A stretch of 63,826 bases of DNA, the filler included, from Ministeria vibrans ATCC 50519 (taxonomy: Eukaryota > Protista > Filasterea): the NCBI GenBank assembly GCA_943704425.1. It is 7 parts of 7 records of this genome, joined end to end, with 100 filler letters (N's around TTAATTAATTAA, not from the genome) between each part and the next. Parts side by side here need not be neighbours in the genome. Positions count along the whole stretch, not along the records: positions 1 to 28,653 come from CALSCP010002066.1; 6 more parts are not named here. The stretch is one strand, 5' to 3'. The notes beneath the pieces are model-generated. The model saw nothing but the letters and a program-made list of their open reading frames with translations. It had not been told where the DNA came from and searched no databases. This document shows, piece after piece, positions 9,501 to 39,100 of this stretch. The stretch's first letter is position 1. Every line of letters begins with the position of its first letter. Position numbers and translations under genes: made by a program.

Positions 9501-11186
9501 GTGACGGCCGACGTGCCAATGGCGTGGATACCTGTGGCGCTGGCGATGGTGGAGCGAGTGGAGAAGGCGCTGCTAAAGCGGTTGCCATTGGAGGTGCGGA
9601 GAGTGTTGCAGGGTTGCTGTAGGGCAGTGGATCGCACTGCGTTGACGGCAGCCGTGGCAAGGGAGCTGGTGCTGGCGACAGAGCGCAGAGCGGGAAGCGT
9701 GTCTGCGGCCAAGAGTGCGTCGACGGTGTCCAAGGCGAGAAGGGTAGCGTTAAGTGAGCTCGCGAGATCGAGGTCAGGATCGATCGGAGCGTTGGAGGGG
9801 TCAAGCAGGCTAAGAGTGTTGTTGACAAGGAAGGAATTGACCTTGTTTAGCGAGGTGAGCATGACCGCTGCAGACTGGGCGGGCGAGTCGGTGGTGGCAA
9901 AGGCGTTGTTAGTGGCGAGCGTGTCAATAATGGAGAGGGTGCCGTTAACCAGATCGCCCGCGGCGTCTTCGGCTTCAAATTCGTTGAGGTCTGTGACAAG
10001 GCAGTTGGGCATGCCATCAGCGGGGTTGTTGTTGCTCATGGTGAGATTTGGCGGGTTGACAAATGGTGTCCACGAAGCGACACCACCCGTGCACAGCTGT
10101 GGGTTGTCGACAATAGTCGCCTGGCCACCAATGGATTTGAGCGAGAGGCGCATTGCGATGGAGCGAAGTGCGAGGTTGTTGCGGATCTCGAGGTCGTCCG
10201 TGATGAAGCGCAGGCTGCTTGTGGCAATGTGTCTGAGCGCGGTATTGTTGGTGACAATGAGGGACGCCTTGATTTTTCGCAGTCCCAAGAGTTCCAGGCG
10301 CTCCAGGCTGGCGCAGTTGGTGACTTCAAGGGACGTGTCGATGTTCTTGTCGCTGGTGTACAGGCGGACGGTGGTGAGCTGCTGGAGATTGTCGATGCGC
10401 AGCTTGTCGCCGACACTCTTGGGGACAGTGTAGTCCAGGGTGCCTCCGACGACGCCTGGGTCGTCAGCAATGAGCAGTGCGGCGGCATTCTTCAGCTTGG
10501 TGAAGAGCGCGAGGAGCGGTGCTGACGTGGGCGAGACAAAAAAAACGCCCGTGAGCGTTCGCACCTTGAGCAGCTGCAAGGAGTCGATGGAGGCAAGGGA
10601 CGGGTTGGCACGAAGGTCAAGGTCGCCATTGAAGGTCGCTGCAATGCTAGAGAATGCGATGACGCTCGAGAGGACCGGATTCTGCCGGATGGCAAGAGTG
10701 CCAACTGAAGTAAGCAGAGGGAAACCGTCGAGGGTAACGAGCGCGTCGTTGTCGCTGATGTCCAGGAGCGTAGACACAGTCTCAAGTTTGGGAAAGGCGG
10801 CGACGGAAGTGGTAGGGAGCGCCGTTAAATTGCAAAGGCGAAGTGTGGTGACGTCGACAAGCTCAGGAAAAATGCCCGAAATGTCGGACAAGGATGCGAG
10901 TGAATCAAGCACCAGCGCACCCTGGATTGTGTCTACTAGTGGGAACGCATTTTCGACTTGCACCGTCGTCCACGACGAGGGCACGACGAGAGTTGCGCTG
11001 ATGGTTGTGCTACAAAATGCATATAGTGACGTCAATTGGAGCGGTCGCGCGACAAGAAGGCGTGTTCATTTGTGGATGGAACCCTTACCAAAGGGGGTTG
11101 TTCAAGGACTCAGTTGGGGTACACACAAGCGCGGAGCAAAAAGACGACGACGCGAGGAGAGTGAGAAGTGCCACAAACAAAAACAT
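6581..11186 (-). CDS. Adhesion-type GPCR: signal peptide, L-domain/LRR-like repeats, GAIN/GPS, 6 EGF repeats, ZU5-like domain (HFS), 7TM_2
   Basis: Exon 1 MFLFVALLTLLASSSFCSA.. (11186-11089), intron about 11088-11010; GPS CYYWSF..WSTDGC..CRCNHLTNFAVL; six EGF repeats; secretin-like 7TM (VVSLLGCIISII..MSVFMWM..CWF..GTTWV..NGFQGLWLFF). Confidence 0.92.
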
Positions 11187-13177: not shown

Positions 13178-16100
13178 ATGAAGTTTGCGCTTCTCGTCCT
13201 TTGTCTTTGTTGTGTCGCCGCCGTGTGCGCCCAAGGCCCACCCAATCCAAGACCTTCGGGTGCACGTCCTTCGTCGCGACCCGACCGACCTACTAGTGTA
13301 AGCGATTGGTTGAATTTTCCATTTGATTCTCACACTACTCTTTTCGCATTGTTGCCACAAAAATTTCAGCGTCCCCTGTTTACCGGCCGCCCGTCTCCAA
13401 CGGGCCCCGCCCGCCCGTCCAACGCTCCAGGTGCTACCGGCAGTGCACCCCAACCCACAAGGGTAAGCTATTTGCGTTGATTGGGCGATATCCAGCGTGT
13501 GGTTCCCACGCAACTCTGTATTTTTTTTTCCTTTCTTCTTATTTACCCCTCACCGTTCTGCTCAGCCGACCGCCGCCGCCCCTGCATGAAACGTTCTTAA
13601 CTTATGTTTTCTTGTCTTCTTTACGTGTTGTCTTGCAGCCTAGCAACGTCGAAGTGCTTGATTGGTACACTTCAAATTTTGCGGGATTCACTGGCAGTGG
13701 CTTTGCTCCAAACCCTAGCGCGGGCCAACTTTCTTCCAATGAGTGGTATGTTGATGTTGCTGCACCAACACCGACAGTGGGTCCCAATGTGAGTGCACGC
13801 CCCACTGGTACACGACCGACAGCCCGTCCCGATGCGAGTGCACGCCCCACTGGTACACGACCGACAGCCCGTCCCGATGCGAGTGCACGCCCCACTGGTA
13901 CACGACCGACAGCCCGTCCCGATGCGAGTGCACGCCCCACTGGAACCCGACCGACAGCCCGTCCCAATGCGAGTGCACGTCCCACTGGTACACGACCGAC
14001 AGCCCGTCCCAATGCGAGTGCACGCCCCACTGGAACACGACCGACAGCCCGTCCTGCTGGAGCAACTGGCGTGGGTGGTCTCGGTGGTGGTGGTCCCGGT
14101 GGTGGTGGTCCCGGTGGTGGTGGTCCCGGGGGTGGTGGCCCAGGTGGCGGAATTGGTCGCCGTGATGTCGGTGTCTATGGGGGCGAGCAAACCTCTGCCG
14201 AGTTTGCTGGCGGCGTTGTGTCTGAATTACCGACTACGCCCGCCGTGTACGCTCTTAACTCAACACGCGGCATTGCGCTGGTATGCAACCAATAACTTCC
14301 CTATCATTTTCTTATCAATATTCTTGCTCTTATACATAACCTAGGGTGTGTTTGCAACTCAAGCCTTTTTCAACCCCGGCTTTTTTGAGCTACAGCTTCC
14401 AGCTCAGCCACTGAGCACAAACGATGTGCTACGAGTGCGCACTGAGTTTGTATCGCTCGGCAATCCCTCAATTGGATGGGCGCTCTCCGCGTACACGGGA
14501 GCTCTCGATAGCCCTGACGCCACCCCCTTTGTCACTCTCGACCGGTTCTCTCCGCCACAACAACAGCAAAGGCCTCCAACTCAGTGGCAATACTCTCTTC
14601 GTACTGCTCATCTCAATGTCACGGCAGGTAAAACATCAGAATGAACAACCAACCAAAATGACAGACCTTCGTTTGCAGATATGGTCTCGTCTGCGCGCAT
14701 CTTCTTGCGCTTCACAACGCGCGGAGGTCCGCCCAACACGCCTTTCTCATCGGGTCTGGTTGGCATCAACAGTGTCCAAGTTCAGATTGTATCGCCCTTG
14801 TCGACTTCCAGTGTCAGTGTGGCTCCCAGTGCGACTCCCAGTGTGGCTCCCACTGCGACTTCCTCCTCTAGCTCTGTCGCTTTGTGTGCGTCTATGCCCT
14901 GCCTCCATGGCGCCACATGCAACGAAATGCTGGACTCATACACCTGCACGTGTGCCCTTGGCTTCAGTGGCGACCACTGCTCTGTTAATGTGGACGAGTG
15001 CTCAAGTGAGCCATGTCAAAACGGTGGAACCTGTACCGACACCGTCAATGGTTTCACTTGTACGTGCGTCTTGGGTTTCACCGACAGCATCTGCCAGACT
15101 AACATTGACGACTGCGCTGCTCAGCCCTGCCTTAATGGTGCTTCGTGTACCGACTCCGTCAACGGCTACTCGTGCGCGTGCGCCTCAGGCTTTACTGGCA
15201 CCCTGTGCGACCAGGACGTACTCGAGTGCGCCTCCGCTCCGTGCCAGAATGGTGGCACGTGTACGGACGGCGTAAACAGCTACACTTGCACGTGCGCTGC
15301 GGGATACACGGACGCCTCATGTGCAACAAACATCAACGAGTGTGCCTCCACTCCGTGCCAGAATGGTGCCACATGTACGGACGGCGTAAACAGCTACACT
15401 TGCACTTGCGCTGCGGGGTTTTTTGGCACCTTTTGCGACACAGCCACTGACGAATGTGCGTCGTCTCCGTGCCAGAACAACGGCGTGTGCTCCGATACGG
15501 TTGCTGGCTACACCTGTACTTGCGTCACTGGCTTCAACGGTGCCCTGTGCCAGACCAACATCAACGAGTGCGCCTCCACCCCGTGTGAGAATGGTGCCAC
15601 GTGTACGGACGGCGTGAACGGCTACACTTGCACGTGCGCTGCGGGATACATGGGCGCCTTATGTGCAACGAACATCAACGAGTGCGCCTCCACCCCGTGC
15701 GAGAATGGTGCCACATGTACGGATGGCGTGAACGGCTACACTTGCACGTGCGCTGCGGGATACATGGGCGCCTCATGTGCAACGAACATCAACGAGTGTG
15801 CGTCAAGTCCGTGTCAGAACGGCGGCGTGTGCACGGATGGAACGAACAGTTTCTCGTGTGCGTGTGTCACCGGGTGGTTTGGCGACGTGTGCGACACGGA
15901 TGTCAACGAGTGCGCGTCGAACCCATGTGGCAATGGGGCGACGTGTGCGGATTCGACGAACGGGTATGCGTGCCAGTGTGCGGCTGGATACGAAGGGCCA
16001 CACTGTCTCACTGAGACGGACGAGTGCGCGTCGAGCCCATGCATGAATGCAGGTGTGTGCGTTGACCAGTTGGCGGGTTTTAGTTGTACTTGTGTGACTG

Positions 16101-17434
16101 GGTACGAAGGCGCTACGTGTGCGATGAACAGCAACGAGTGCGCGTCCAATCCGTGTACCAATGGCGGCGTGTGTAATGACGCTATCAACGGCTACTCTTG
16201 TACGTGTGCCTCTGGTTTCACGGGTGTTCTGTGCGACCTGGATCTCGACGAGTGCGTCTCGTTCCCGTGTGCCAACGGTGCTTCGTGCGTGAACAAAGCG
16301 AATGGCTTCTCTTGCTCGTGTTCTGCGGGCTTTTTTGGAGCGTTGTGCGAATCGGAGACGAACGAGTGTGCGTCGAATCCCTGCTTGAACGGTGCGTCTT
16401 GTACTGATTTAGTCAATGGCTTTTCCTGTTTGTGTTCGGCCGGCTACACAGGCAGTTTGTGCACTGTGAACGAAAACGAGTGTGCATCGAACCCTTGCCT
16501 CAACGGCGGTGTCTGCACCGACCATGTCAACAGTTTCTTTTGCGCCTGTCCAAGCGGCTTTACCGGGACGACCTGCGCGGACGATGTCGACGAGTGCACG
16601 TCCAACCCGTGCTCAGGCGCGACCTCATTCTGCTCCAATAACATCGGCTCGTACAGCTGCTCTCCTCCCCTCGAGGGTGCAGTTCTTGCTCAGTCACTTG
16701 TACCCACAACTGGTGCGACGATCACCTCGTCGAATGTGAAGGTTGTCGTTCCTGCTGGAGCACTGACAGCTGGTACAACCATTACACTGGCGCAATTTCC
16801 CGCAACGTACCAGCCTAATGTTGCGCCTGCGACGACGTCAGGTGCTGCCGGATTCTTCTACGAGCTTGCTCCCTCCATTTCTTCGTTCAACGGCAAGCAA
16901 GTGCGGGTAACAGTCACCATCCCAAATTTTGACGCCTCCAAGACGTATGTGCTGTACTATCGTGCGAGCGGTGGAGCATGGACAGAGGCGTCCAGTCAAG
17001 TCGTCGATGCGACACTGCACACCGTTTCGGGTGGCCTTCTGCACTTCAGCACAGTTGGTGTCTACACAGCCACTCAGCCAGCGACGGGCAACCAGAACAA
17101 CAGTGGCGCATCCTCCAACACAATCCTGATCGTTGTCCTTGCCGTGGTGGCGTCCGCTCTTGTATGCCTCGTCGTCATTGCCGCCATCCTCTACACACGT
17201 CGGCGTCGCCAAGCGCACCTGTGGACCAACAGCAGCGCCAAGCCCACTGCCACCTCCACGTCGCTCTTTGCCGACACCAGTGCGGCTGGCCAAGAGCAAC
17301 AGATGGGCTCGCACGATTCGTTTACCAATCCGATCTTTGCTGATAGCACCGACAATCTGCCCCGCGCCGTTCCCGAGAAACGCACTCCCATGGATGCCTT
17401 TTACATCGACAATGGCGATGAATTTGTTGCCTAG
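13178..17434 (+). CDS. Single-pass Notch-like EGF-repeat surface protein with juxtamembrane ZU5-like (HFS) domain
   Basis: Signal peptide MKFALLVLCLCCVAAVCA; several short exons; 15 complete + 1 partial EGF repeat in exon ~14680-17434; ZU5-like ..VVPAGAL..YELAP..GGLLHFSTVGV; TM ILIVVLAVVASALVCLVVIAAILY then RRRR; tail with FTNPIF. Confidence 0.9.
13792..14150 (+). repeat. Coding tandem repeats: ~6 x 45 bp (SARPTGTRPTARP[D/N]A) then (GGGGP)x4
   Basis: Visible unit gagtgcacgccccactggtacacgaccgacagcccgtccc..; in frame within an exon of the EGF protein. Confidence 0.9.
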
Positions 17435-21760: not shown

Positions 21761-22302
21761 ATGAGCGGCGATCCATCAAACTCGCCTGTCTCAGGGGATA
21801 CATCGCTTGACGCTCATGGCAGTTCTGATCGGGCAGCGTCGCCGTTGGCTGGAGATCATGAGCTTGATCGCGCGATTTTACAGTCCATGCTCCCACCCGG
21901 GATATCCTGCTTGTCCGAGGAGGAGCAGGAGGCGTACATTGACAACTGGTTGGTGACCATTCGACAGCGAGAAGAGTTTGAACGTGCTGAAGCGGTAAGG
22001 AAAAAGGAAATGGGTTGAGTTCAACTCTCTCTCTCTCACACTCTCTCTCTTTCGTCACTTCTCGATGTGCAGGCCCGCGTTGAAAGAATAGCACAGGAGT
22101 ACCCTCGCCTCCACACGGCACTCTATGAGTTCAGCGAAGAGGCGTTCCAGCGCACCTTTCGCGACTGCATTGCCAACCTCTCGAATGCTTCGGACCTTGC
22201 GTCGCTCCCATGCACTCGCCTGGGGCCTCGTCTCTTCAGAATAGAGATGCTTACACCCCAGACATGTGCTCAGTTTCTTGAAGGTATGCTATTGTCAGTG
22301 TC

Positions 22303-22384
<82 letters not shown>

Positions 22385-23011
22385 CTGACTGATTGTGTAA
22401 TGTGTGTCTCTTATTGAATGTTAGAGATTGACCATTTCGAAGAGTGGTGCACCTCGCAGGGACTGCCGATACGGCGTCCGAATAGCATGAACGAACACGG
22501 AGCCATTCTTGACGAGATGGGGTTTGCGCCGTTGATGCGAGAATGGATTCGCTATGCAGTGGAACCCCTGAGTCGCGTGTGCTTTCCAGAGGTGTTGCTT
22601 GAGGAGTCGCACTTGGACGACCACCATGCGTTTGTGGTGGAGTACGGAGCGGGGAAGGACCGAACACTGAGTGAGCATGTGGATGATGCTGAAGTGACCC
22701 TCAATCTCTGTCTTGGGCGTGTCTTCACCGGAAGCAAATTGCTCTTCAACGGCATTCGCTGTGGCCACCACCGCCAGTGTGAGGCGCGCACCGACGAACT
22801 CATCACGACAGACCACACACTGGGCTCTGCCCTTCTCCACTTGGGCAACCACCGCCATCGTGCACTGCCGCTCGAGTCGGGTCATCGCTCCAATCTCATT
22901 CTGTGGTGTCGCAGTCGTGTCTATCGCGAGCGCATCTACGCACAGTTGGAGGACATGGACGAGAGGGACGTGCAGCCGAGCGACTGCTTGATACCCTGTG
23001 ACTATGTATAA
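21761..23011 (+). CDS. OGFOD2: 2OG-Fe(II) oxygenase, OGFOD2-like, 3 exons
   Basis: RPNSMNEHGAILDEMGF; HHAFVVEY; HVDDAEVTLNLCLG (HxD); HLGNHRHRALPLESGHRSNLILWCRS. Confidence 0.85.
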
Positions 23012-24883: not shown

Positions 24884-27874
24884 ATGAAAGTCTATGGACT
24901 CTGCTACGTCCCCGTTCACGCCGTCACCCCTGTGGTTGTTCAGTACGTGCCCGTCTACCACCCCGTGCCCCTCCGAAGTGTCTCGGTGAACGGTAAGATC
25001 CCATTTTTTTTATTCTCAACTTACCCCTTTCACTTTCCTCCTCTCATCTTGCTCCTCCTGCCAGCGCAAATGGTCGACGTCTGCGCCGAAGTCACAGTCA
25101 AGCAAGTCTACGTCAACAGCGAACCCACACCCATTGAGGCACAGTAAGAAGACAAAAAAAGAAGACAAAAAAACAAAAAAACAAAAAAAAGTCGCACTGC
25201 ACTCCTCTCTCTGTCCCTAACGCCTCTCCCTCCGTCTCCTGCTGCTAGATATGTCTTCCCACTTGACGAACGCGCGGCGGTCTGCGCGTTCAGCTGCGAC
25301 GTGGACGGGCGTCAGATTGTGGGTGAGGTGAAGGAGAAGGACGAGGCGACGCGCGAGTACAATGCGGCTGTGCAGCAGGGCCACGGCGCGGCGCTTCTCA
25401 CGCAGGAGAAGGAGGACGTCTTCAAGGCCAAGATTGGCAACATTCTGTCGGGCTCGGTCGTGACTGTGTCCATCACGTATGTGGTCGAACTTAAGACGGA
25501 GGGTGACGCTGTGCGTTTCTTGCTGCCCACTACTGTCGCGCCGCGCTACACACCGCCCGGCACGGCACCCACCGCACAGCCACCTACTGCGTCGTTTGCT
25601 GCGAGCGCCGCTTATGCGCTTGATATTAAGCTCGAGTGCTCCATGATGTCGGCGATCCAATCGATTGTTTCGCCCTCTCACGGCCATGTCATGGTCGCGA
25701 CTGTCGAGGGCCAGACGGCCACGGCACAGCTGCTGAATGCCGTGGACATGGACAAGGATCTGGTGGTGCTGGTGACGCCCGAGAAGCCCTTGGTGCTGCA
25801 AGCGTGCCTCGAGCACGACGCGCCCTCAGGCTCCCACGCCGCCATGCTCACCATCTGCCCACAGTTTGAGCTCGTCGACAAGCGAGGCGAGTACGTCTTT
25901 GTGGTGGACCGCAGTGGCTCGATGCGTGGTGCCCAGATGACAAAGGCATGTGCCGCCCTGCAGCTCTTTCTGCGTTCACTGCCCGCCGACTGCTACTTCA
26001 ACATTGTCGGATTTGGCTCGCGCATGGAAATGTACGAGCGCTCGTCGGTGCGCTACAACGCCCACTCGCTCGCCAGTGCCACCAAACACATCAACGGAAT
26101 CACCGCCAACCTGGGCGGCACCGAACTGCTCAACCCACTACGCACCGTAATGGACCGTCCTGCCATTCCCGGCTACGCCCGGCAGGTCTTTGTGCTCACC
26201 GACGGACAGGTGTCCAACACCGAGGCGGTCGTGTCCTACGTGCGCTCGCAGGACCGCCACGCGCGTGTCTTTGCTCTGGGCATTGGCTCGGCCGTCTCGC
26301 GTGCTCTCGTTGAAGGCATTGCGCGTGCCGGCAATGGTACTGCCAAGTTTGCCGTCGAGAGCACTCGTCTCGAGGGTCTTGTCGTGCCTCAGCTGAAGCA
26401 AGCCATGCAGCCCGCCATCCGCGACGTCAAAGTCGACTGGGGCACTAGCCTTGCGGCCGCCTCGGCGTCTCAGCCGCCTGTCTACACCGAAAAGGCCCCC
26501 GAGCCTGAGCCTAGCCAGCCACCCAAGGTCAAGTCTCTCCTGGGCTACCGCAGCCCCAATGCGACTGCCACCATGACTTCCGCTACATCCACCGCCACTC
26601 CCGCCAGTCGTGCCCTTGTCAAGCAGTCGCCGCACTCCCTTCCACCCGTCTTCAATGGCGAGCGCTTCCAGGTCTACTGCATCTTCGAGCCGGGCCAGTC
26701 GCTGCCCAAGAGCGTCAGCATTACTGCACAGACACCTGACGGGCCCCTTGAGGCAACTGCCGACATCACCGAGGAGACGACTGTCGAGGGTCTTCTCATC
26801 CACCGCATGGCCGCGCGTGCTCTTCTGCGCGACCTCGACAACGGTACCAGTCCCCTTCATGCCGGCCTCGGCTTTGGCTCACATCCATCGCTCGCCGAAA
26901 TCAAGCGCGAAATGGTTACGCTGAGCAAGCGCTACAACCTTGCGAGCACCCATGCCGCCTTTGTCGCAGTCGACGTGCGCTCTCTCGGCGAACGTCTTCA
27001 GTGCGGCGGCTGGACTCCTCATGTCGACGTGCCCGCCATGGCACCTCAGCAACAACAACAGCAATTCCGCAGCCGTGGCGGTCCCATGCTTGCTGCGCCT
27101 ATGATGATGCAGGCAGGATTCGGAGGTGGCGGTGGCGGCGGCTACGCTCGCAACTGTGCGGCGCCCATGATGAAGGCCAAGATGAAGAAGGGCGCCGGTC
27201 CACCACCGCCCATGGCTCCCGGTGGACCCGGGGCCCAGGTGGCCATGAGACGCTCGGCTGCCGCTCCTGCCGCTCCTGCCATGAACTCTGCGGCCTCCGC
27301 GCCTACCGCTGACATGCTCTGTGACAGCTTTGGTTTTGTTGACGATTCAATGGACAACTCGAGTCTGTGCAGCAGCGACGACGACGAGGACGACGACTGG
27401 GAGGAGAAGACAGAAAAACTCGAGCTGAACTCAGCGTCGCTCCTGTCCGTCAAGACCGACAAGAAGCACATCAACAAGGAGAGTAGCAGCAGCAGCAGAC
27501 GTAAGGAAGGTGGTGGTGCGGAGAAGAAGAACTCCAAGAGTGTGTCGCCGCTTGAGACAATGGACCTCATTGTGAGCACTCAGGACGTCGATGGCTCAGT
27601 GGGTCTCACGGCGGCCCTTGTCGCGTCGGTCAGTGCACAGCTGAGTCAAGACGCAGTTATGACCGCCTGCAGCGCCTATCCGTCGAGCACAGGCAGCGTT
27701 GACACGCGTACCATTGCCGGCACTGCCCTGGCCATTGCGTTCCTGCGCGCCCGTCTTGCAGACCACAAGGACGAGTGGGAGCTCATGGTCGACAAGTCCC
27801 TTGACTTCCTTCGTGCTGCTGTGGGCGCTTCACACGTCGATGCCCTTCTTGCTGCTGTCGCTGCGCTTCTCTAG
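24884..27874 (+). CDS. VIT + vWA domain protein (VWA5A-like)
   Basis: VKQVYVN..PIEAQ|YVFPLDERAAVCAF; VVDRSGSM MIDAS; LGGTEL; VLTDG; VFALGIG. Confidence 0.9.
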
Positions 27875-28476
27875 GAACACACACACACACACACACACAC
27901 ACAATAGTTTATCAAGCCATAAAAATGCACAGTAATAATTTCATTCATTTGAATACATTAGTAGGTCTGTCTCACTCAGTAGTCAGTCGTCAGCATAGTG
28001 TGGGACCTACTCACTCAGTAGTCAGTCGTCAGCATAGTGTAGTGTATACACTTACTCACGCCTGTTTGTCTGGTCAAGTGGTCATACTAGCTGTTATTAT
28101 TTTGAAAATTTCAACCTCAGTAATAAAATTAGTAAAATAATTATTACGTCTTCGATCGATTATCGATAAAAATTTTCTTCTGTACATTCACCGGGACCAG
28201 AAGTACCAACTATAAATGAGTCGGGTAGGAGTGCAGGGCTCGCTTGAGCCCTCACTCCTACATTCGGTAAGCTTTTGGCACTTTTGCGTCGCTAAGTTTT
28301 TCCAATTTTTTTTCCCTTTTGATCAAATATTATAATCTTTTACCTTTTAAAAAACCCATCTGTAGGGTGGAACAGCAGACATGCATCAGGTATTTGACGC
28401 GACATCCAATATTTACAGTTAAATATTTTGCAGCCTACAAAATATGTTTATATATCACAAAAAGGCCTCGTCTGGT

Positions 28477-28589
28477 GTCTGCTTGGTCTAGTGGTATGAT
28501 AGAAGCGCAACATCTGCGCTTCCTTACATCTCGCTTCGGGCTTCAATCGAAATTGCAAGAGGTCGCCGGTTCGATTCCGGCAGCAGACC
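28477..28589 (+). tRNA. tRNA-Pro(CGG) with two introns (28501-28528 at 25/26; 28541-28553 at 37/38)
   Basis: Acceptor GTCTGCT/AGCAGAC; A box TGGTCTAGTGG; T arm GCCGG-TTCGATT-CCGGC; after removing both inserts the arm reads T CTCGC TT CGG GT GCAAG AGGTC, like eukaryotic tRNA-Pro; oligo-T terminator from 28591. Confidence 0.9.
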
Positions 28590-28653
28590 GTTTTTTTTTG
28601 GTTCTTTTTCTTTTTTTTTGGTTCTTTTTTTTCTTGCTTGTTTCTGTTTTTTT

Positions 28654-33157: not shown

Positions 33158-36100
33158 GAGAGAGAAAGGAGGGAGCAAGAAACAAAGTGATAGAGAGAGA
33201 GAAACAAAGTGATAGAGAGAGAGAGAGAGAGTGAGAGAGAGAGAGAAAGGAGGGAGCAAGAAACAAAGTGATAGAGAGAAAGAAACAAAGTGATAGAGGG
33301 AGAGAAACAGAGTGATAGAGGGAGTGAGATGCACTATGTTTCCCCCCAGCGAAATCTCCATTCAACTACCCCACCTGCCATGGCTGTTTCGGACGCAACA
33401 GCGTTGCCATACACACTGCTCGTTTGTGCGCCTTCAATTTGCGCACAGTGCGGCGGGTGGTTGTATCGAACACCACGACAGCGCCCGTGTCGTCGCACAC
33501 GGCAAGCTTGGCCTTGTTGCGCGCCAAGGAGAAGGCATTGATCTCGTCATCGGCAACAGACTCACTCCACAGTGCTGAGCTCATGTTGCGTACATCCCAC
33601 TGGTGCACGGTGGTGCCCGTCGTGGCGTACAAATGCGGCGGCGCAAGCGAGACAGTTGAGACTACGCAATAAACACACAAGGTATGAGTCTGATGCGCTG
33701 ATCGGTGTTGTGCTACGGGGGGCATGGAGTACCATCAACCCCGACACTGCCGTCGCGCGGTGCGGCACACAGAGCGTCCGACTGCAACACACACGAACCG
33801 GGTGCGACGCGATCATCCCACACGGACAGTCGCCCGCCACTATCCCCCGCCGCCACAAGCGATCCGGTAGCGTCCACACACAGAAGTTCCTTGCACGCTG
33901 GGTTAACCAGTGCCTCTAGCTCGATCATTTTGAAAGAATACGAAACTAATTATTTTGATATTGGAAAAATCACTCAAGGGAATTATCGACACCAACTCCG
34001 AATTCCTTAGTCCGAAGGGATTAGAGAGCAGGGCGGAGACCAGAGATTCAAGAGTCTAGATTGAGATTCAAGATAAGGTTTCTTCCTTTCTGACTGACAG
34101 GGCATTGAGGGCAAAGTTCAAACTCAATTTTCTCTGATTCTCTCAGGACTCAGTAGTCTTTTTATTCCAAATCTGACGTCGGACTCTCGAGCCCGATACC
34201 AAAATGTCTCGTTCGCGTCGCCGGAGCAATTCGTTTCGCGGCGAATCCATGCACGACTCGATGCGCGGTGCGTGTGACGTGATCGCGGCGGCAGCGGCAA
34301 GCGGCAACACGGACGGCAGTCAAGCGGCCTCTTCGGCGCCGTCCGTCGTCGTGTCGCCGGGCGCGTCGAGCCTCAGTCTTGCAGCGGCGTCTGGGGCGAG
34401 CGCGGGCGACGGGTCGCTCGTCGCAAACACAGTGGGCTGGACGTCGTCTGGGAGCGTCAGAAGGCCTCCAGGGGCCCCTCCGCTCTCGCAGCTGACCATC
34501 AAGGATGTGGTGCGCAAGCGCAACCAGGTCCTCAAGCTGCCCCCTCCAACCGTCGAGGAAACAGCCGAGTTCTTCTCACTTGTCGACATTTACATCACAG
34601 ATGATCTCTTGAAAACCAGCCGTTTTTGGTACGAGCCCGCCTCTCTCTGACCCCCCCATTGCCTTGCTACGTACATACCACACTTCTTTCATCTGTGCGC
34701 CGCGCCATTCTTCTCACTTTTATCGACTGCTCTTTTATTTTTTACTTTCATTATTATTATTATTAATTTTTTTTTTTCAAAAAAAATCTCTCGATTGTTC
34801 TGCGCGCCCCTCGCCCGTTCCCCTAGTCCTCGTGCGAAGCACCCATTCCAATGCGCTCTATTTGTGCATTCTGGTTCCTCTTTTTTGTTTTATTCTTGTT
34901 TCGCACTCTTCTTTTGTTTGAGTGGGTACCAAGATCTGATCTGTGTTCTTCCTCTGATAGCAACGACGCCGAATACGAGGCGACCAGGAGACAAATTACC
35001 GACTTGGCGGTGCGCATTCACGCCGAGTATCAACGCAAAGAGGAGAATTCGGCAAAGCTGAGCGAGTCGGAGTTTGCGCTTAAGGCTATTGTGGACGATG
35101 TCATTTCGCGTCTCATGCTGCGCGATCAGGTAGCAGCGCAAAAAGGAGGGCAAGTGTGAGAAACTGTTTGAGTTGACCCTGTGAGTGTTTGTGTGTGTCA
35201 GTATGTGTGTGCGTGTGTTTGTGTGTGTGTGTGACACTCTCACAGAGAGACAGAGTAAGAGAGAGTGAGTGAAATCATGGATTGAGTTGTACATTAAAAC
35301 TTTATATTAATATCCACACCAAATTTAGTGAGTATAATTTACACTGTCTTCATTTATTCGGATGGGGAATTGGTGGGTGACGCACACGTGGACGAGATGG
35401 GCGAATCAAGGGAATCTATCGAGTCCCGTAATGCCGTGTCAGGGTGTGTGTGGACGACGCGGCGTTGCCGTAGGCCGCGCAGACTGCTCGATGTGCTCAG
35501 TGCGGGCGATACTGGCGGATGAAGACTCCCAAGCGCACTGTGTTCCTTGTCCACAAAGCTCTGTGGCGACTTGTCCATCGTTTTTCTTGTCTCCACTGTC
35601 TCGTCTCTCTTCTCCAGTCTCTCTCCCGTCAATTCCACTGTCTCGTCCCTCGTCTCCACTGTCTCGTCCCTTGTCTTCACTACCTCGTCCCTCGACTCCA
35701 CTGTCTCGTCCCTTGTCTCCACTGTCTCGTCTCTCGTCTCCACTGTCTCGTCCCTCGTCTCCACTGTCTCGTCCCTCGTCTTCGCTATCTCGTCCCCTTC
35801 CTCCTCTCCTTCCTCTTCCTCCCACTCGGCATCAATCTCTGGACTGCTCCCTTGCACTCGGATTACAGGTGCGCTACTGCGACGCCGGTACCGACGAAAT
35901 CCTCGCTGGATCACTTGTGCAGCATTGTTGGCACGACGCTCCCCTTCTCTCATGAACGGGCGCGGTGTGTTGCGCCGGCGCAAATGGCGACGCACGGTGG
36001 TCTGGATCACTCGAGCAGCAGCATCTGCACTGGCAAACCCAACGCGTGACGTATCACATGTCGTAGCACATGTCGCATTCCCTTGTGGCTTGCATGCAGT

Positions 36101-39100
36101 CGTGATTGGCGGCGTCATGGTGTCCCGATCAACTTCCCATTGCGGCCTCTTGTGATCTTCCACCTTTTCCGCACCTTCTTGATTCGAGTGCTTCTTGAGT
36201 CGACGAAATCGCAGTTGGATCAGACGGGCAGCGGCCTCCATCTCGACCTCCTCCTCGGCCGCGTTAGCTAATCGCGACACCCTGTTCTCTTCCATTTCAC
36301 ACGTGCACCCGCCGTCATTCGCTTGCTCCCCAGCCACTTTCTGCCCTCCCGCCTCAGCGTGCGTCTGCTCTGCTTCGTGTTGCCGTCGGGCCTGATGCCG
36401 CCTTACACACCGCTGTACCGTCGTGGCCGCCCACTGCCGGCGCTCTTCTTCGCTTCCAGTTATTGACTCTTGCGCGTCGCCTCCCTGACTTTCATCAAAG
36501 ACATTGTCATCCTCTGCAATATCTGACTCTGCCACTACCGAGAGTCGCCCCAACGCATTTACGTGACTGGCCAAGTGCTCAGGCATGTGCAGCCCGTCGG
36601 CCGCCGACTCGGAATCCCGCTGAGTCTCCTCCAGCCCCACTCCAGCAGTCGTGTCGTCCCACTCACCGCAAGCTGCGCTACTCTCCACTGGTGATGATGT
36701 GGGCGCACGAGTAGGAAAAGACCTGAGTGTGCCGTCTGTTGCAGTGACAGACGTAGAAGGGGAGGTATTAGCACTGCTGGTCTGCTTCGCCGCCTCGTCG
36801 CGCAAGCGCTGCAGCAAGAGCTTCTCACGGTACGACATGGTCGGCGTGAACATCAATTTCACTGCAGGTACATGACTATGCTGTGTTGACGCCAGACTCC
36901 GAGAAGCACCACATGCCTCGCTCAAGGACGTCGCGCCTTGCGTCGTGACCCTCGCGCTCTTTGCTGACGCCTGCGTCTCACTTGAAATACCAGAAACACG
37001 CGATGCCTCGAGCGCCTCAAAAAACTCCGCGTGGCCCGCCGCCTCGTCAGATGTCTCACAGCGATCGCGCTCGAGCTCCTGCAACTGTCCTGTGTCACTC
37101 TCGTCATGAGTCGCCTCTGTTGCAATCGACACTGTCTTCGTCTGTTGTTGCTGTCCATGTGCTACTGCAGGTTTAGACACAGTTTCGCCGCGCCATGCAG
37201 CAACAGCCGCTTGAAACTCCTGTCGTGCCTTCTCTTCGTCGTACGTTCCCTCAAACAACGAATCCGAATGGCGTGAAACTTCATCTGGCGCTCTATTCGC
37301 CAATGTGCTCTCGCGATCGCAATGAGTCGCGCTCTCCTCCACGCGCGAAGCGGCGACATGAAACATACGCATACGCGTGCGCGTCGGGGAGGCAACTGCA
37401 GGTACCCTAGACGACGTTGACGTATAAGTCGACGTGGAGCGAACAGGCTCGCGCGTCTGCTCGTCGGATGTGCGCACTAGAGGTGGCAGACGTGTTTGGG
37501 CGGAGACTGCATGCACACTAGCCGACACGTCGACTTGACCTTTGCCACGAACTATTCGTCGTAAATCATCCCGGCGCTTCGCATCGTGACGGCGTGACGC
37601 GCGTAGCACTTCGGCGGCGTAGCGAGTGACAGGGCCCGGCTGCGCGGAACGCCACTTCGCACGCATCTGCGCCCGTCGCGCCCGCTCCGCATCCATCTCA
37701 ACACGCAGTTGTTCGAGTTGCTGTTCCATGCGAGCATTGTCGCGTTCCAGTCGAGAAGACGGAGCGACAGTTCGTCTACAAAGCAAACTGATGTTGTTCT
37801 CCTTGGCAACCTTCAAAACAAAAGGCATACTTGACTTCGCCGTGGCGCAGAGGCTGCCCCAGTTGCCCTGTGGAGGCTGCTTTCGAATGATTTTCACTCG
37901 CGCGAGATGTTTTTGACGACATTCGTCGACTCATTCAGAAACTGTGAAACGAGAAGAATTTTGAATAAAATTGACAGTTCAGTGATCACTGATCACAAGT
38001 TACAAGTCACAAGAATTGTTTTGGAGAAGTGTGTTGCATTGGTGGCAATTGATACTCTAGTATGCACTATGCCCACTTGGACCTTGATTAAGAAACATGC
38101 TCGTTGGCAATCCAATATGAATATCAAGTGAGAAAGCTTTTATTACAGAAGAACGTGTGTGAGCGGGCATTGTGTCACTTCGACTCCTTCTCCTCATCTT
38201 TCCCATCTGTCTGCTTGGTGGCAGTAGTATCGGCAAGACGCGACGCTGCAACCTCACGCACACGGTATCCATTGACAGCAGCGGCAATTTTCTCGTGGGC
38301 TTCCATAGGAGTTGACGTTTGCGTAAAGTATGTCTCAAACTTGCCATCGGGATTGAGCAGATATGTAATGATGGTGTGGTCCACCAAGTAGTCATCGGGA
38401 TCCTCATCGTCAGCTAAAACACATACCGTGTGTGAGAGAGAGAGGAGAGAGAGGTGGTGTGTGTGTGTGTTCGTGTGTGTGTGTGCAAGTGTATGTACAT
38501 AAGAATGTATGTACATAAGAATGTATGTACATAAGAATACATGTGCATAAGAATGTATGTACATAAGAATACATGTGCATAAGAATGTATGTACATAAGA
38601 ATACATGTGCATAAGAATGTATGTACATAAGGATGTGAAAGTGTATAAGGATGTGTGAGATGGGGAAAAGAACGAATGGACACGACGTGCGTACCGGGGC
38701 TCTTGCTGTGGTACACGCGGTAGCCCTTGCACACGGCCGCAATGGACTCTTCGTCGCCGCTCAGTCCAATCATTTTAGGATGGAATTCTAAGGAAACTGT
38801 GACTGACAAAGGCACAAACAGGTTGTCAGGACCTACCTTTCACGTACGCTTCGACAATCTTTGGTGTGTCGCGCTGTGGATCAATCGTAATGAAAAGAGG
38901 CTGCACCTCAACGCCAATACTCTTGTCGGCAGCCACTGAGTTGGTCACGTCGGCAATCTTCTCGAGTTCGTCGGGACACACGTCGGGGCAGTGCGTGAAG
39001 CCAAAGTAGAGGATGACCCAGCGGCCGCGGAAGTCCTCGTCCGACACCTTCTGGCCGTCGCTTCCAATCAGCGTGAAGGGAACGCCAATGCGCGCCTCAC

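What the first reader, a model, noticed from the sequence alone, without database searches (positions are those of the whole stretch)
28477..28589. tRNA-Pro(CGG) with a second, non-canonical bulge-helix-bulge intron at position 25/26
Seen: a 28-nt insert (28501-28528) between the D arm and anticodon stem contains a perfect 8-bp hairpin (GAAGCGCA/TGCGCTTC). It is framed by a 3-nt bulge AT|A, a 4-position helix TATG/CTTA (one U-U mismatch) and a 3-nt bulge CA|T. Cutting after the second base of each bulge removes exactly the insert. A separate 13-nt intron sits at 37/38 with TTCG/CGAA pairing. Known: non-canonical and multiple BHB introns typify archaea and a few algae such as Cyanidioschyzon merolae, while animal and yeast TSEN mostly cut at 37/38. 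Inference: this apparent holozoan may have a relaxed-specificity splicing endonuclease and tRNA genes that standard scanners miss.
Basis: partly seen in the sequence, partly recalled or inferred. Interest (0 to 1): 0.87.

Follow-up and report, generated by a model that had tools for sequence, protein, structure and literature searches.

The report
Twice-interrupted proline tRNA gene
This is very probably a working proline tRNA gene broken by two small introns, one at a place thought impossible outside archaea and a few algae; the same non-photosynthetic, animal-like protist genome holds more than twenty similarly broken or scrambled tRNA genes.

Summary
Window 28477-28589 (+) becomes a 72-nt tRNA-Pro(CGG) only after removing a 28-nt insert between positions 25 and 26 (28501-28528) and a 13-nt intron at 37/38 (28541-28553). 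Both are framed by bulge-helix-bulge (BHB) geometry. ARAGORN and Rfam miss the raw gene.

The gene does not look like a decaying pseudogene:
- It has an exact copy of a promoter-like element, one of 10 exact copies in 29.7 Mb; those examined, with one exception, precede tRNA genes.
- It has a T9 terminator, perfect acceptor and T stems, and G37.
- After splicing, its positions 8-48 match the paralogous Pro(AGG), apart from nt 34 and nt 41.
- Its hairpin is unique in the genome, so it is not a repeat.

The genome carries at least 11 other genes with D-arm inserts and at least 11 circularly permuted tRNA genes. It also encodes Sen2, Sen34, Sen54, Sen15 and RtcB. It has no photosystem or light-harvesting genes.

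This matches the Cyanidioschyzon merolae type of disrupted tRNA genes, but in a heterotroph.

Caveats:
- No RNA evidence could be obtained.
- The anticodon stem has one C-A mismatch.
- The BHB central helix has a U-U mismatch and a more stable competing fold.
- An atypical intron-free Pro(CGG) exists in a virus-like tRNA array.

The parts
28439..28458 (+). Upstream promoter-like element (AAAATA-N4-TATATAT-CAC) shared by the dispersed tRNA genes of this genome. It ends 18 nt before the tRNA 5' end.
   Evidence: Exact match to the pattern derived from other tRNA genes. There are only 10 exact matches in 29.7 Mb, and 28 at up to 1 mismatch against 3 for the reversed control. Of the 10 exact matches, 9 lie upstream of tRNA genes; the tenth (C2371) has no recognisable tRNA downstream.
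28477..28500 (+). Exon 1: tRNA positions 1-25 (5' acceptor strand, U8/G9, D stem and D loop AGTGGTA).
   Evidence: Read directly from the sequence. The D arm is identical to that of the three intron-less tRNA-Gly(GCC) genes and to in-silico spliced Pro(AGG).
28501..28528 (+). Intron 1: 28 nt, non-canonical, between positions 25 and 26.
   Evidence: Its removal is required for ARAGORN to call tRNA-Pro(CGG). It is the best BHB score of 4088 boundary pairs. Its hairpin is unique in the genome.
28502..28522 (+). Intron hairpin (helix h' of the BHB): 8-bp arms 28502-28509 and 28515-28522, loop 28510-28514.
   Evidence: It is part of the minimum-energy fold, whose z-score is -3.6 against shuffles.
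28495..28498 (+). 5' strand (TATG, exon) of the central 4-position BHB helix. It pairs with CTTA at 28523-28526, giving 3 of 4 pairs and one U-U mismatch. It is flanked by the bulges 28499-28501 and 28527-28529.
   Evidence: The BHB conformer scores -6.7 kcal/mol.
28529..28540 (+). Exon 2: positions 26-37 (U26, 5' anticodon-stem strand CTCGC, loop up to G37). Anticodon CGG lies at 28537-28539.
   Evidence: Identical to Pro(AGG) apart from nt 34.
28541..28553 (+). Intron 2: 13 nt at the canonical 37/38 position. The helix TTCG (28535-28538) pairs 4 of 4 with CGAA (28548-28551).
   Evidence: ARAGORN in intron mode reports it once intron 1 is removed. BHB score: central 4 of 4.
28554..28589 (+). 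Exon 3: positions 38-73 (3' anticodon-stem strand GCAAG with A41 opposite C29, variable loop AGGTC, T arm GCCGG/TTCGATT/CCGGC, 3' acceptor strand, discriminator C).
28591..28599 (+). T9 run, the Pol III terminator, followed by GGTTCTT and a second T run at 28611-28619.
   Evidence: The same arrangement follows other dispersed tRNA genes.

Best explanation
Window 28477-28589 is a functional nuclear tRNA-Pro(CGG) gene interrupted twice.

Inferred pathway:
1. RNA polymerase III starts at the upstream TATA-like/CAC element (28439-28458) and stops at the T9 run.
2. The precursor presents two bulge-helix-bulge motifs. One is a relaxed hBHBh'-like motif around the 28-nt intron at 25/26: central helix 3 of 4 pairs, 8-bp inner helix, 2-bp outer helix. 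The other is an hBH-type motif around the 13-nt intron at 37/38.
3. The tRNA splicing endonuclease (Sen2, Sen34, Sen54 and Sen15 homologues are encoded) cuts after the second base of each 3-nt bulge.
4. RtcB, which is also encoded, joins the three exons.
5. End trimming and CCA addition give a 72-nt tRNA.

Together with Pro(AGG), read as IGG, this tRNA would cover all four proline codons. CCG makes up 22% of proline codons in the window's genes.

Shown here: the sequence anatomy, the in-silico product, the shared promoter, the genome-wide presence of similar genes, and the enzyme genes.

Inferred: transcription, cleavage at these sites, the order of splicing, and use in translation.
For: - In-silico double splicing gives an ARAGORN-valid tRNA-Pro(CGG).
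- At positions 8-48 the product equals spliced Pro(AGG) from C2085, apart from nt 34 and nt 41.
- The tRNA-restoring boundary pair ranks first of 4088 by BHB score. P is about 0.04 given a hairpin insert.
- In this genome, 8 of 13 introns whose boundaries were set by tRNA homology fall in the top 3.5% of same-length windows for BHB geometry. Both introns of this gene are among them.
- The promoter element matches exactly, one of 10 exact copies in the genome. A T9 terminator follows.
- The hairpin is unique in the genome, so it is not a repeat.
- Only two canonical-type Pro genes exist, AGG and this one. No UGG of that type was found.
- CCG codons are used.
- Many other disrupted tRNA genes yield valid tRNAs when rejoined in silico.
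- Sen2 and Sen34, Sen54 and Sen15 and RtcB are encoded.
- The BHB motif energy of -6.7 kcal/mol lies within the range reported for processed C. merolae motifs, -11.1 to +1.15 kcal/mol (PMC3728597).
Against: - There is no RNA evidence. The contigs of the four runs laid (X14, X17, X19, X20) did not cover 27852-28653.
- No relatives were found for covariation analysis.
- The anticodon stem has a C29-A41 mismatch that Pro(AGG) lacks.
- The central BHB helix has a U-U mismatch, and a shifted non-BHB pairing is 6 kcal/mol more stable.
- Several other inserts in the genome show weak or no BHB: Ala(AGC) 9 nt, Glu(CUC) and Pro(AGG). BHB cleavage may therefore not be the only route.
- An intron-free Pro(CGG) of a different, atypical class exists in an array on C2093.
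Confidence: 0.7

Rival explanations
1. It is a pseudogene: a former tRNA-Pro(CGG) gene inactivated by a chance palindromic insertion and now decaying. CCG would be read by another tRNA, for example the array-type Pro(CGG) or Pro(UGG).
For: - C29-A41 mismatch in the anticodon stem.
- Imperfect central helix and a more stable competing fold.
- Intron-free Pro(CGG), Pro(UGG) and Pro(AGG) exist in arrays on C2093 and C585.
- No expression data.
Against: - Exact promoter match and T9 terminator.
- Acceptor stem 7 of 7 and T stem 5 of 5, canonical T loop, G37.
- Exon sequence identical to Pro(AGG) over positions 8-48 apart from two sites.
- The insert sits in exact BHB register.
- More than 20 other genes are interrupted in comparable ways, so interruption is the norm here.
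- The array tRNAs are atypical: A37 where tRNA-Pro has G37 (G37 being the rule is my own knowledge, not tested here), T loop ATCGTCC, no promoter, no T run.
Confidence: 0.15
2. The insert is removed, but not by canonical BHB recognition or not at exactly these phosphodiesters. This would resemble the ectopic introns of the Guillardia nucleomorph, most of which cannot form a BHB.
For: - Some inserts in the same genome lack any BHB: Ala(AGC) 9 nt, Glu(CUC), and weakly Pro(AGG).
- The BHB conformer here is not the minimum-energy fold.
- PMC3728597 notes non-BHB ectopic introns in the G. theta nucleomorph.
Against: - This particular intron has the best BHB geometry in the gene and one of the best among the ectopic introns.
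- BHB geometry is strongly enriched at intron boundaries genome-wide.
Confidence: 0.1
3. The 28 nt are not removed: the mature tRNA keeps an extra hairpin arm at position 26. Alternatively, the locus is an assembly artefact.
For: Nothing direct. The Ala(AGC) genes with a 9-nt D-loop insert that is too short for a BHB show that retained insertions cannot be excluded in this organism.
Against: - A 28-nt arm at the D-stem/anticodon-stem hinge has no precedent and would break the L shape. This rests on established tRNA structure knowledge.
- DNA runs from several studies hold 95-98% of the sampled words of the surrounding 4.6 kb. The tRNA itself was not covered by the runs laid.
Confidence: 0.04

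Closest known systems
[quoted passage not shown] 2007, 2013; PMC3728597)
   Same: - Ectopic and multiple introns in the D stem, D loop and T loop as well as at 37/38.
- Strict and relaxed BHB motifs.
- Circularly permuted genes, some also carrying introns.
- An upstream TATA-like promoter and a T-stretch terminator in place of reliance on A and B boxes.
- Intron sizes of tens of nucleotides.
   Different: - The host here has no photosystem or light-harvesting genes. It carries animal-like genes on the same contig.
- A Sen15-like gene is present, whereas none was found in C. merolae.
- Processing is untested here but shown by RT-PCR and Northern blot there.
Non-canonical BHB introns of archaeal tRNA genes (Crenarchaeota, Thaumarchaeota, Nanoarchaeota)
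   Same: - The same geometry: two 3-nt bulges separated by a 4-bp helix, cut after the second bulge base.
- Introns at many positions, up to three per gene.
- Detectable only with BHB-aware tools.
   Different: - The enzyme set here is the eukaryotic heterotetramer type (Sen2/34/54/15), not the archaeal alpha4, alpha'2, (alpha-beta)2 or epsilon2 forms.
- The genes have Pol III promoters and terminators.
- The exons are typical eukaryotic cytosolic tRNA-Pro.
Ectopic tRNA introns of the Guillardia theta nucleomorph and atypical introns of Chondrus crispus; permuted tRNA genes of prasinophytes and the Bigelowiella nucleomorph (review PMC13578239)
   Same: Nuclear or nucleomorph tRNA genes with D-loop or T-loop introns, or with a permuted order of the halves.
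   Different: - All of those are algae or algal relict nuclei.
- The 2026 review lists such genes only for these lineages.
- Most G. theta introns cannot form a BHB, unlike the intron studied here.
Ordinary eukaryotic tRNA intron at 37/38 (yeast and animal TSEN substrates)
   Same: Intron 2 (28541-28553) is exactly of this kind: position 37/38, a 3' bulge, and a helix between the anticodon loop and the intron.
   Different: Intron 1 lies at 25/26. The ruler mechanism of yeast and animal TSEN, which measures from the mature domain, would not be expected to reach that position.

Membership tests
Eukaryotic cytosolic tRNA-Pro | Cloverleaf with a 7-bp acceptor stem, D arm, 5-bp anticodon stem, 7-nt loop with U33, 5-bp T stem and TTCRANY T loop | tested here: met
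   Met only after removing 28501-28528 and 28541-28553. ARAGORN then calls a 72-nt tRNA-Pro(CGG). One C29-A41 mismatch remains in the anticodon stem.
Eukaryotic cytosolic tRNA-Pro | NGG anticodon with G37, and a body like other eukaryotic Pro tRNAs | tested here: met
   The anticodon loop is TTCGGGT. Positions 8-48 are identical to the genome's other canonical-type Pro gene (AGG) apart from nt 34 and nt 41.
Eukaryotic cytosolic tRNA-Pro | Expressed, processed and charged with proline | not testable with these tools
   The read runs laid did not cover the locus. No tRNA-seq data were available.
BHB (bulge-helix-bulge) tRNA intron | Two 3-nt bulges on opposite strands separated by a 4-bp helix | tested here: inconclusive
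   The register is exact: bulges at 28499-28501 and 28527-28529. The central helix has only 3 of 4 pairs, with a U-U mismatch. The conformer scores -6.7 kcal/mol and is not the minimum-energy fold. Such relaxed motifs are accepted in C. merolae.
BHB (bulge-helix-bulge) tRNA intron | Flanking helices h and h' of at least 2 bp | tested here: met
   The inner helix is 8 bp (28502-28509 with 28515-28522). The outer helix is 2 bp (G28494-C28530 and G28493-U28531).
BHB (bulge-helix-bulge) tRNA intron | Cuts at the symmetric bulge positions restore the mature tRNA exactly | tested here: met
   The pair ranks first of 4088 boundary pairs.
BHB (bulge-helix-bulge) tRNA intron | Cleaved by the tRNA splicing endonuclease | not testable with these tools
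   Only the genes for Sen2, Sen34, Sen54 and Sen15 could be shown.
C. merolae-type system of BHB-disrupted nuclear tRNA genes | Many nuclear tRNA genes with ectopic or multiple introns | tested here: met
   Pro(AGG), Ala(AGC) x3, Gln(UUG), Gln(CUG), Glu(CUC), Leu(CAA) and a Met-like pair carry D-arm inserts. Leu(CAA) and this gene have two introns each.
C. merolae-type system of BHB-disrupted nuclear tRNA genes | Circularly permuted genes (3' half upstream of the 5' half) | tested here: met
   Eight permuted tRNA species (nine gene copies, Lys(CUU) occurring twice) rejoin in silico to ARAGORN-valid tRNAs: Arg(ACG), Gly(UCC), Gly(CCC), Arg(UCG), Lys(CUU), Ser(UGA), Arg(UCU) and Ala(UGC). Thr(CGU) and Arg(CCG) were read by eye only. 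Circular RNA intermediates were not testable.
C. merolae-type system of BHB-disrupted nuclear tRNA genes | Upstream TATA-like promoter and T-stretch terminator shared by intact and disrupted genes | tested here: met
C. merolae-type system of BHB-disrupted nuclear tRNA genes | Host is a red alga or other alga | tested here: not met
   No LHC, PsbA/D or PsbO was found anywhere in the assembly, with a positive control. This is a host attribute, not part of the mechanism.
tRNA pseudogene or tRNA-derived repeat | Degenerate stems, loss of promoter or terminator, or a multi-copy insert | tested here: not met
   The promoter and terminator are intact and there is a single stem mismatch. The insert hairpin is unique in the genome, and the whole gene is single-copy.

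The most novel reading that the evidence does not exclude
A non-photosynthetic, probably opisthokont protist runs a genome-wide Cyanidioschyzon-like system of BHB-disrupted nuclear tRNA genes. It includes ectopic and multiple introns (one at 25/26) and a dozen circularly permuted genes. These are transcribed from a dedicated upstream promoter and processed by an ordinary-looking four-subunit TSEN plus RtcB. That would be the first case outside algae and their relict nuclei. It would show that a eukaryotic heterotetrameric endonuclease can handle archaeal-style substrates.
Probability: 0.55. Interest if true: 0.85.

Novelty: new member of a known kind. Interest (0 to 1): 0.75.

Why it matters
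Ectopic BHB introns and permuted tRNA genes in eukaryotic nuclei are reported only from a few algae and nucleomorphs (2026 review PMC13578239). They are often read as an archaeal vestige or a red/green-algal peculiarity.

Finding the full syndrome in a heterotroph with animal-like genes, a complete Sen2/34/54/15 set and RtcB would have three consequences:
- It would broaden the known phylogenetic range.
- It would argue for repeated origin, or wide retention, of promoter-driven, position-independent tRNA splicing.
- It would give an organism in which the substrate range of a four-subunit TSEN can be tested.

There is also a practical point. Standard eukaryotic tRNA annotation would leave this genome apparently short of decoders. 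The canonical-type tRNAs found for Pro, Gln, Glu, Lys and several Arg and Gly anticodons are invisible or partly invisible to default scanners.

Tried and rejected
- **Raw scans.** ARAGORN and Rfam on the raw sequence found nothing usable.
- **Alternative ARAGORN reading.** In intron mode on the raw gene, ARAGORN offers tRNA-Val(AAC), using the insert hairpin as the anticodon arm with a 26-nt intron. I rejected it because it needs an unnatural variable region and ignores the perfect Pro anticodon arm.
- **Mobile element or MITE.** Rejected: the hairpin has no other copy at up to 3 mismatches and the gene is single-copy.
- **RNA and strain evidence.** The look-up of sequencing runs found 20 holders. 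The four runs laid (X14, X17, X19, X20) gave contigs only up to 27851, so nothing covers the tRNA.
- **Relatives.** The 73%-identical neighbour protein lies on a 5.4-kb metagenome contig with no tRNA downstream. Two metagenome pattern scans found nothing.
- **Naming the organism.** Three protein searches were run: VIT-VWA, an EF2-like paralogue, and alpha-tubulin exon 2. None gave a named self-hit. Mitochondrial proteins could not be used because of in-frame UGA codons. The protein atlas search was uninformative.
- **Census.** About 100 promoter-like hits at 2 mismatches were therefore not inspected, and I did not try to read them by another route. The census is a lower bound from a biased sample.
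- **Deletion scans.** Exhaustive deletion scans with ARAGORN proved too permissive to fix intron boundaries. Boundaries were set by homology and BHB score instead.

Full report
**1. The observation**

- The 5' acceptor strand (28477-28483) pairs 7 of 7 with 28582-28588.
- The D arm is GTCT/AGTGGTA/TGAT.
- The T arm is GCCGG/TTCGATT/CCGGC.
- The discriminator is C, and a G plus T9 follows directly.

Two stretches interrupt the cloverleaf. The first is 28 nt (28501-28528), between position 25 and position 26. The second is 13 nt (28541-28553), between 37 and 38.

ARAGORN finds no tRNA anywhere in the window. Rfam gives only a 15-bit tRNA-Sec match. After removing both stretches, ARAGORN reports a 72-nt tRNA-Pro(CGG). 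After removing only the first, it reports the same tRNA with a 13-nt canonical intron.

**2. BHB geometry**

The 28-nt insert fits the bulge-helix-bulge scheme as follows.
- The 5' cut falls after the second base of the bulge A-U|A (28499-28501).
- The four exon bases before that bulge (UAUG) face CUUA of the intron (28523-28526). This gives three pairs and one U-U mismatch.
- The 3' cut falls after the second base of the bulge C-A|U (28527-28529).
- The intron bases in between form a perfect 8-bp hairpin.
- Two further pairs extend the helix on the exon side.

The 13-nt intron has a perfect UUCG/CGAA central helix and the usual 3' bulge next to the anticodon stem.

I scored all 4088 possible start/end pairs in the gene for this geometry. 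The pair that restores the tRNA ranks first. I then placed the same hairpin at random offsets within a random 28-nt insert at this site. The geometry came out right in 3.9% of trials, against 1.6% for fully random inserts.

Weak points:
- The BHB conformer of the motif scores -6.7 kcal/mol. A shifted, non-BHB pairing scores -13.0 kcal/mol. The value still lies within the range reported for processed C. merolae motifs.
- The spliced anticodon stem has a C29-A41 mismatch.

**3. Signs that the gene is maintained**

- About 20-40 nt upstream of many tRNA genes of this genome lies a shared element, roughly CAAAATA-N4-TATATAG-CAC followed by a T- or A-run.
- A pattern built from it has only 10 exact matches in 29.7 Mb, and the window gene's (28439-28458) is one of them. 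Nine of the ten precede tRNA genes; the tenth (C2371) has no recognisable tRNA downstream. At up to one mismatch there are 28 matches against 3 for the reversed control.
- The 21-nt hairpin has no other copy at up to three mismatches. The whole gene is single-copy. A repeat or MITE insertion is therefore excluded.
- Pattern searches for the canonical Pro anticodon arm find only two genes: this one and a Pro(AGG) on C2085. No UGG gene of that type was found.
- The Pro(AGG) gene is itself interrupted by about 47 nt in the D loop. Spliced in silico, it is identical to the spliced CGG gene from position 8 to 48, apart from the wobble base and nt 41. This independently fixes the 25/26 boundaries.
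- With A34 read as inosine, AGG plus CGG would cover all four proline codons. CCG accounts for 41 of 184 proline codons in the four long reading frames of the window.

**4. The rest of the genome**

I anchored a survey on the B box GGTTCGANTCC (70 hits against 12 for the control), on the best Rfam tRNA hits and on the promoter hits. It shows that interruption is common.

*Inserts in the D loop or D arm:*
- Pro(AGG)
- three identical Ala(AGC) genes, 9 nt each
- Gln(UUG), 42 nt
- Gln(CUG), 29 nt
- Glu(CUC), 30 nt
- Leu(CAA), 22 nt plus a 37/38 intron
- a tandem Met-like pair

*Permuted genes.* At least eleven genes have the 3' half lying upstream of the 5' half, separated by a short linker. The whole unit sits between the promoter element and a T run. 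They are:
- Arg(ACG)
- Gly(UCC)
- Gly(CCC)
- Arg(UCG), with a 37/38 intron
- Ser(UGA)
- Arg(UCU), Thr(CGU) and Ala(UGC), each with a T-loop intron
- Lys(CUU) x2, with the junction in the T loop
- Arg(CCG), with a T-stem intron

*In-silico rejoining.* Rejoining the pieces gives ARAGORN-valid full-length tRNAs for eight permuted species and for six D-arm-interrupted genes. Thr(CGU), Arg(CCG) and the Met-like pair were read by eye only.

*Canonical introns only:* Asp(GUC) x3, Arg(CCU), Ser(GCU), Ser(CGA), Leu(CAG), Leu(UAA) x2 and Tyr(GUA).

*Intact genes.* Thirteen sampled genes of the same class are uninterrupted.

*BHB enrichment.* For 13 introns I set the boundaries by tRNA homology alone. 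In eight of them the true boundary lies in the top 3.5% of same-length windows for BHB geometry, and both introns of the window gene are among these eight. Ala(AGC), Glu(CUC), Pro(AGG) and both Leu(CAA) introns score poorly. BHB recognition is therefore the rule but perhaps not the only route.

The sample is biased and incomplete.

**5. Enzymes**

The genome encodes:
- two proteins with the catalytic endonuclease domain, one Sen34-like (C1244) and one Sen2-like (C1078)
- a Sen54-type domain (C1258)
- a Sen15-type domain (C1907)
- RtcB (C2497)

At the gene level this is an ordinary eukaryotic heterotetramer plus the 3'-phosphate ligase. Nothing in the gene content explains a wider substrate range. 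That range is inferred from the substrates.

**6. The organism**

No tool gave a name. The evidence is as follows.
- The window contig itself carries an adhesion-GPCR (EGF, GPS and 7tm_2 domains), an EGF-repeat protein and a VIT-VWA protein. The tRNA gene therefore belongs to the same genome as these animal-like genes.
- The assembly has no LHC, PsbA/D or PsbO, while the cyanobacterial control is found each time.
- The mitochondrial contig C1523 is 55.9 kb, 24-28% GC, and reads UGA as Trp.
- Alpha-tubulin exon 2 is 88-90% identical to metazoan tubulins.
- The best hit of the neighbouring VWA protein is 73%, from a metagenome. Named hits reach 38-49% and are mostly holozoans.

'Heterotrophic, probably opisthokont' is as far as the evidence goes. 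'Holozoan' is plausible but not shown.

The organism's DNA turns up in algal and marine metagenome runs.

**7. A second class of tRNA genes**

Contigs C585, C2083, C2093, C135 and C491 carry tight arrays of intron-less tRNA genes. These lack the promoter element and lack T runs.
- The arrays include Pro(AGG), Pro(UGG) and one Pro(CGG) at about C2093:9229-9301.
- The array Pro(CGG) shares only 43 of 72 positions with the window product. It has A37 in place of G37 and the T loop ATCGTCC.
- Other array members are odd as well: a 73-nt Leu(CAA) without a long arm, and an Ala-type body (G3:U70) carrying a UGG anticodon.
- C2083 is packed with ATG-initiated orphan reading frames. One has a weak NCLDV-capsid match.

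I read the arrays as belonging to virus-like elements, not to the host's standard set. This is not proven.

The existence of an intron-free Pro(CGG) is the main fact on the pseudogene side.

**8. Comparison with what is known**

The anatomy matches the 'highly disrupted' nuclear tRNA genes of Cyanidioschyzon merolae:
- ectopic and multiple introns in the D stem, D loop and T loop
- strict and relaxed BHB motifs
- permuted genes, with or without introns
- an upstream TATA-like promoter and a T-stretch terminator (PMC3728597)

A 2026 review lists non-canonical introns and permuted nuclear tRNA genes only for C. merolae, Chondrus, prasinophytes and nucleomorphs (PMC13578239). Full-text searches found no report from a heterotroph. 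tRNAscan-SE looks for non-canonical introns only in archaeal mode.

The differences here are the host, the presence of a Sen15-like gene, and the absence of any RNA evidence.

**9. Verdict**

The most likely reading (0.7) is a functional, doubly spliced tRNA-Pro(CGG) gene within a genome-wide system of BHB-disrupted tRNA genes.

As a kind of system it is known. As an occurrence in a non-algal eukaryote it appears to be new, and it deserves experimental follow-up.

Noticed in passing
G000 contigs: C491:39686(-), C2280:70132(+), C2431:223992(-), C2647:46362(+), C738:67497(+), C1993:66399(+), C2350:47766(-), C2085:48590(+), C277:5074(+) and 23596(-), C335:20052(-). Loci L050, L078, L081, L084, L121, L122, L123, L129, L089, L090, L047.: At least eleven circularly permuted tRNA genes: the 3' half comes first, then a short linker, the 5' half and a T run. 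Several carry an extra intron in the T loop, T stem or at 37/38. Eight species give valid tRNAs when rejoined in silico.
   Followed up: partly
Window 28439-28458, and upstream of the dispersed tRNA genes (for example L037, L040, L041, L078, L081, L084, L121-L123, L129, L131): A conserved upstream element, CAAAATA-N4-TATATAG-CAC-(T/A run), lies 18-100 nt before the tRNA 5' end. There are 10 exact genome matches; nine precede tRNA genes and the tenth (C2371, L124) has no recognisable tRNA. This is likely a TFIIIC-independent Pol III promoter. One hit (C2371:117563, L124) precedes an unidentified RNA of about 130 nt with no Rfam match.
   Followed up: partly
G000:C585 (about 22250-22460 and 35680-37100), C2083 (about 7100-8100 and 38150-38540), C2093 (about 9020-9420), C135:20-200, C491:11940-12500. 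Loci L052, L053, L074, L075, L002, L042, L049.: A second class of tRNA genes: dense intron-less arrays without the promoter element or T-run terminators. Members include Pro with A37 and T loop ATCGTCC, a 73-nt Leu(CAA) lacking the long arm, tandem anticodon variants on one body, and an Ala-type body (G3:U70) with a UGG anticodon.
   Followed up: partly
G000:C2083:8300-36000 (L140-L142): The contig holding two tRNA arrays is packed with ATG-initiated orphan reading frames. One 438-aa frame (L140 5609-6925, minus strand) has a weak NCLDV major-capsid match (E 6e-4, below the cut-off). An M48-like peptidase is also present. It looks like a virus-derived element. I observed only.
   Followed up: partly
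G000:C123:2351-2432(-), C434:20883-20964(-), C434:28977-29058(+) (L039-L041): Three identical tRNA-Ala(AGC) genes carry a 9-nt insert (ACGCTTCTT) in the D loop. It is too short for, and does not fit, a BHB motif. Either it is removed some other way or it stays in the mature tRNA.
   Followed up: partly
Window 6581-11035(-), 14681-17434(+), 25301-27874(+): Long intron-free reading frames: an adhesion-type GPCR (EGF repeats, GPS, 7tm_2), a protein with 15 EGF repeats, and a VIT-VWA protein. They give the contig an animal-like gene flavour.
   Followed up: partly
G000:C1523 (55,949 nt; L108-L111): The mitochondrial genome contig is 24-28% GC, holds more than 25 tRNA genes, and reads UGA as Trp (cox1 has 13 in-frame TGA codons).
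   Followed up: partly
G000:C1301:16745-19873 (L120 1246-4374, +): A single-exon 1042-aa EF2-like paralogue. It is only 35-42% identical to EF2 of any named organism. The best full-length hit is a protein with an RRM domain fused to EF2 domains.
   Followed up: no
G000:C2553, about 104864-104975 (L083 245-356, +): A weak vault-RNA-like match (22.9 bits, gathering score 34, E 0.05) around a B box that has no matching tRNA 5' half.
   Followed up: no
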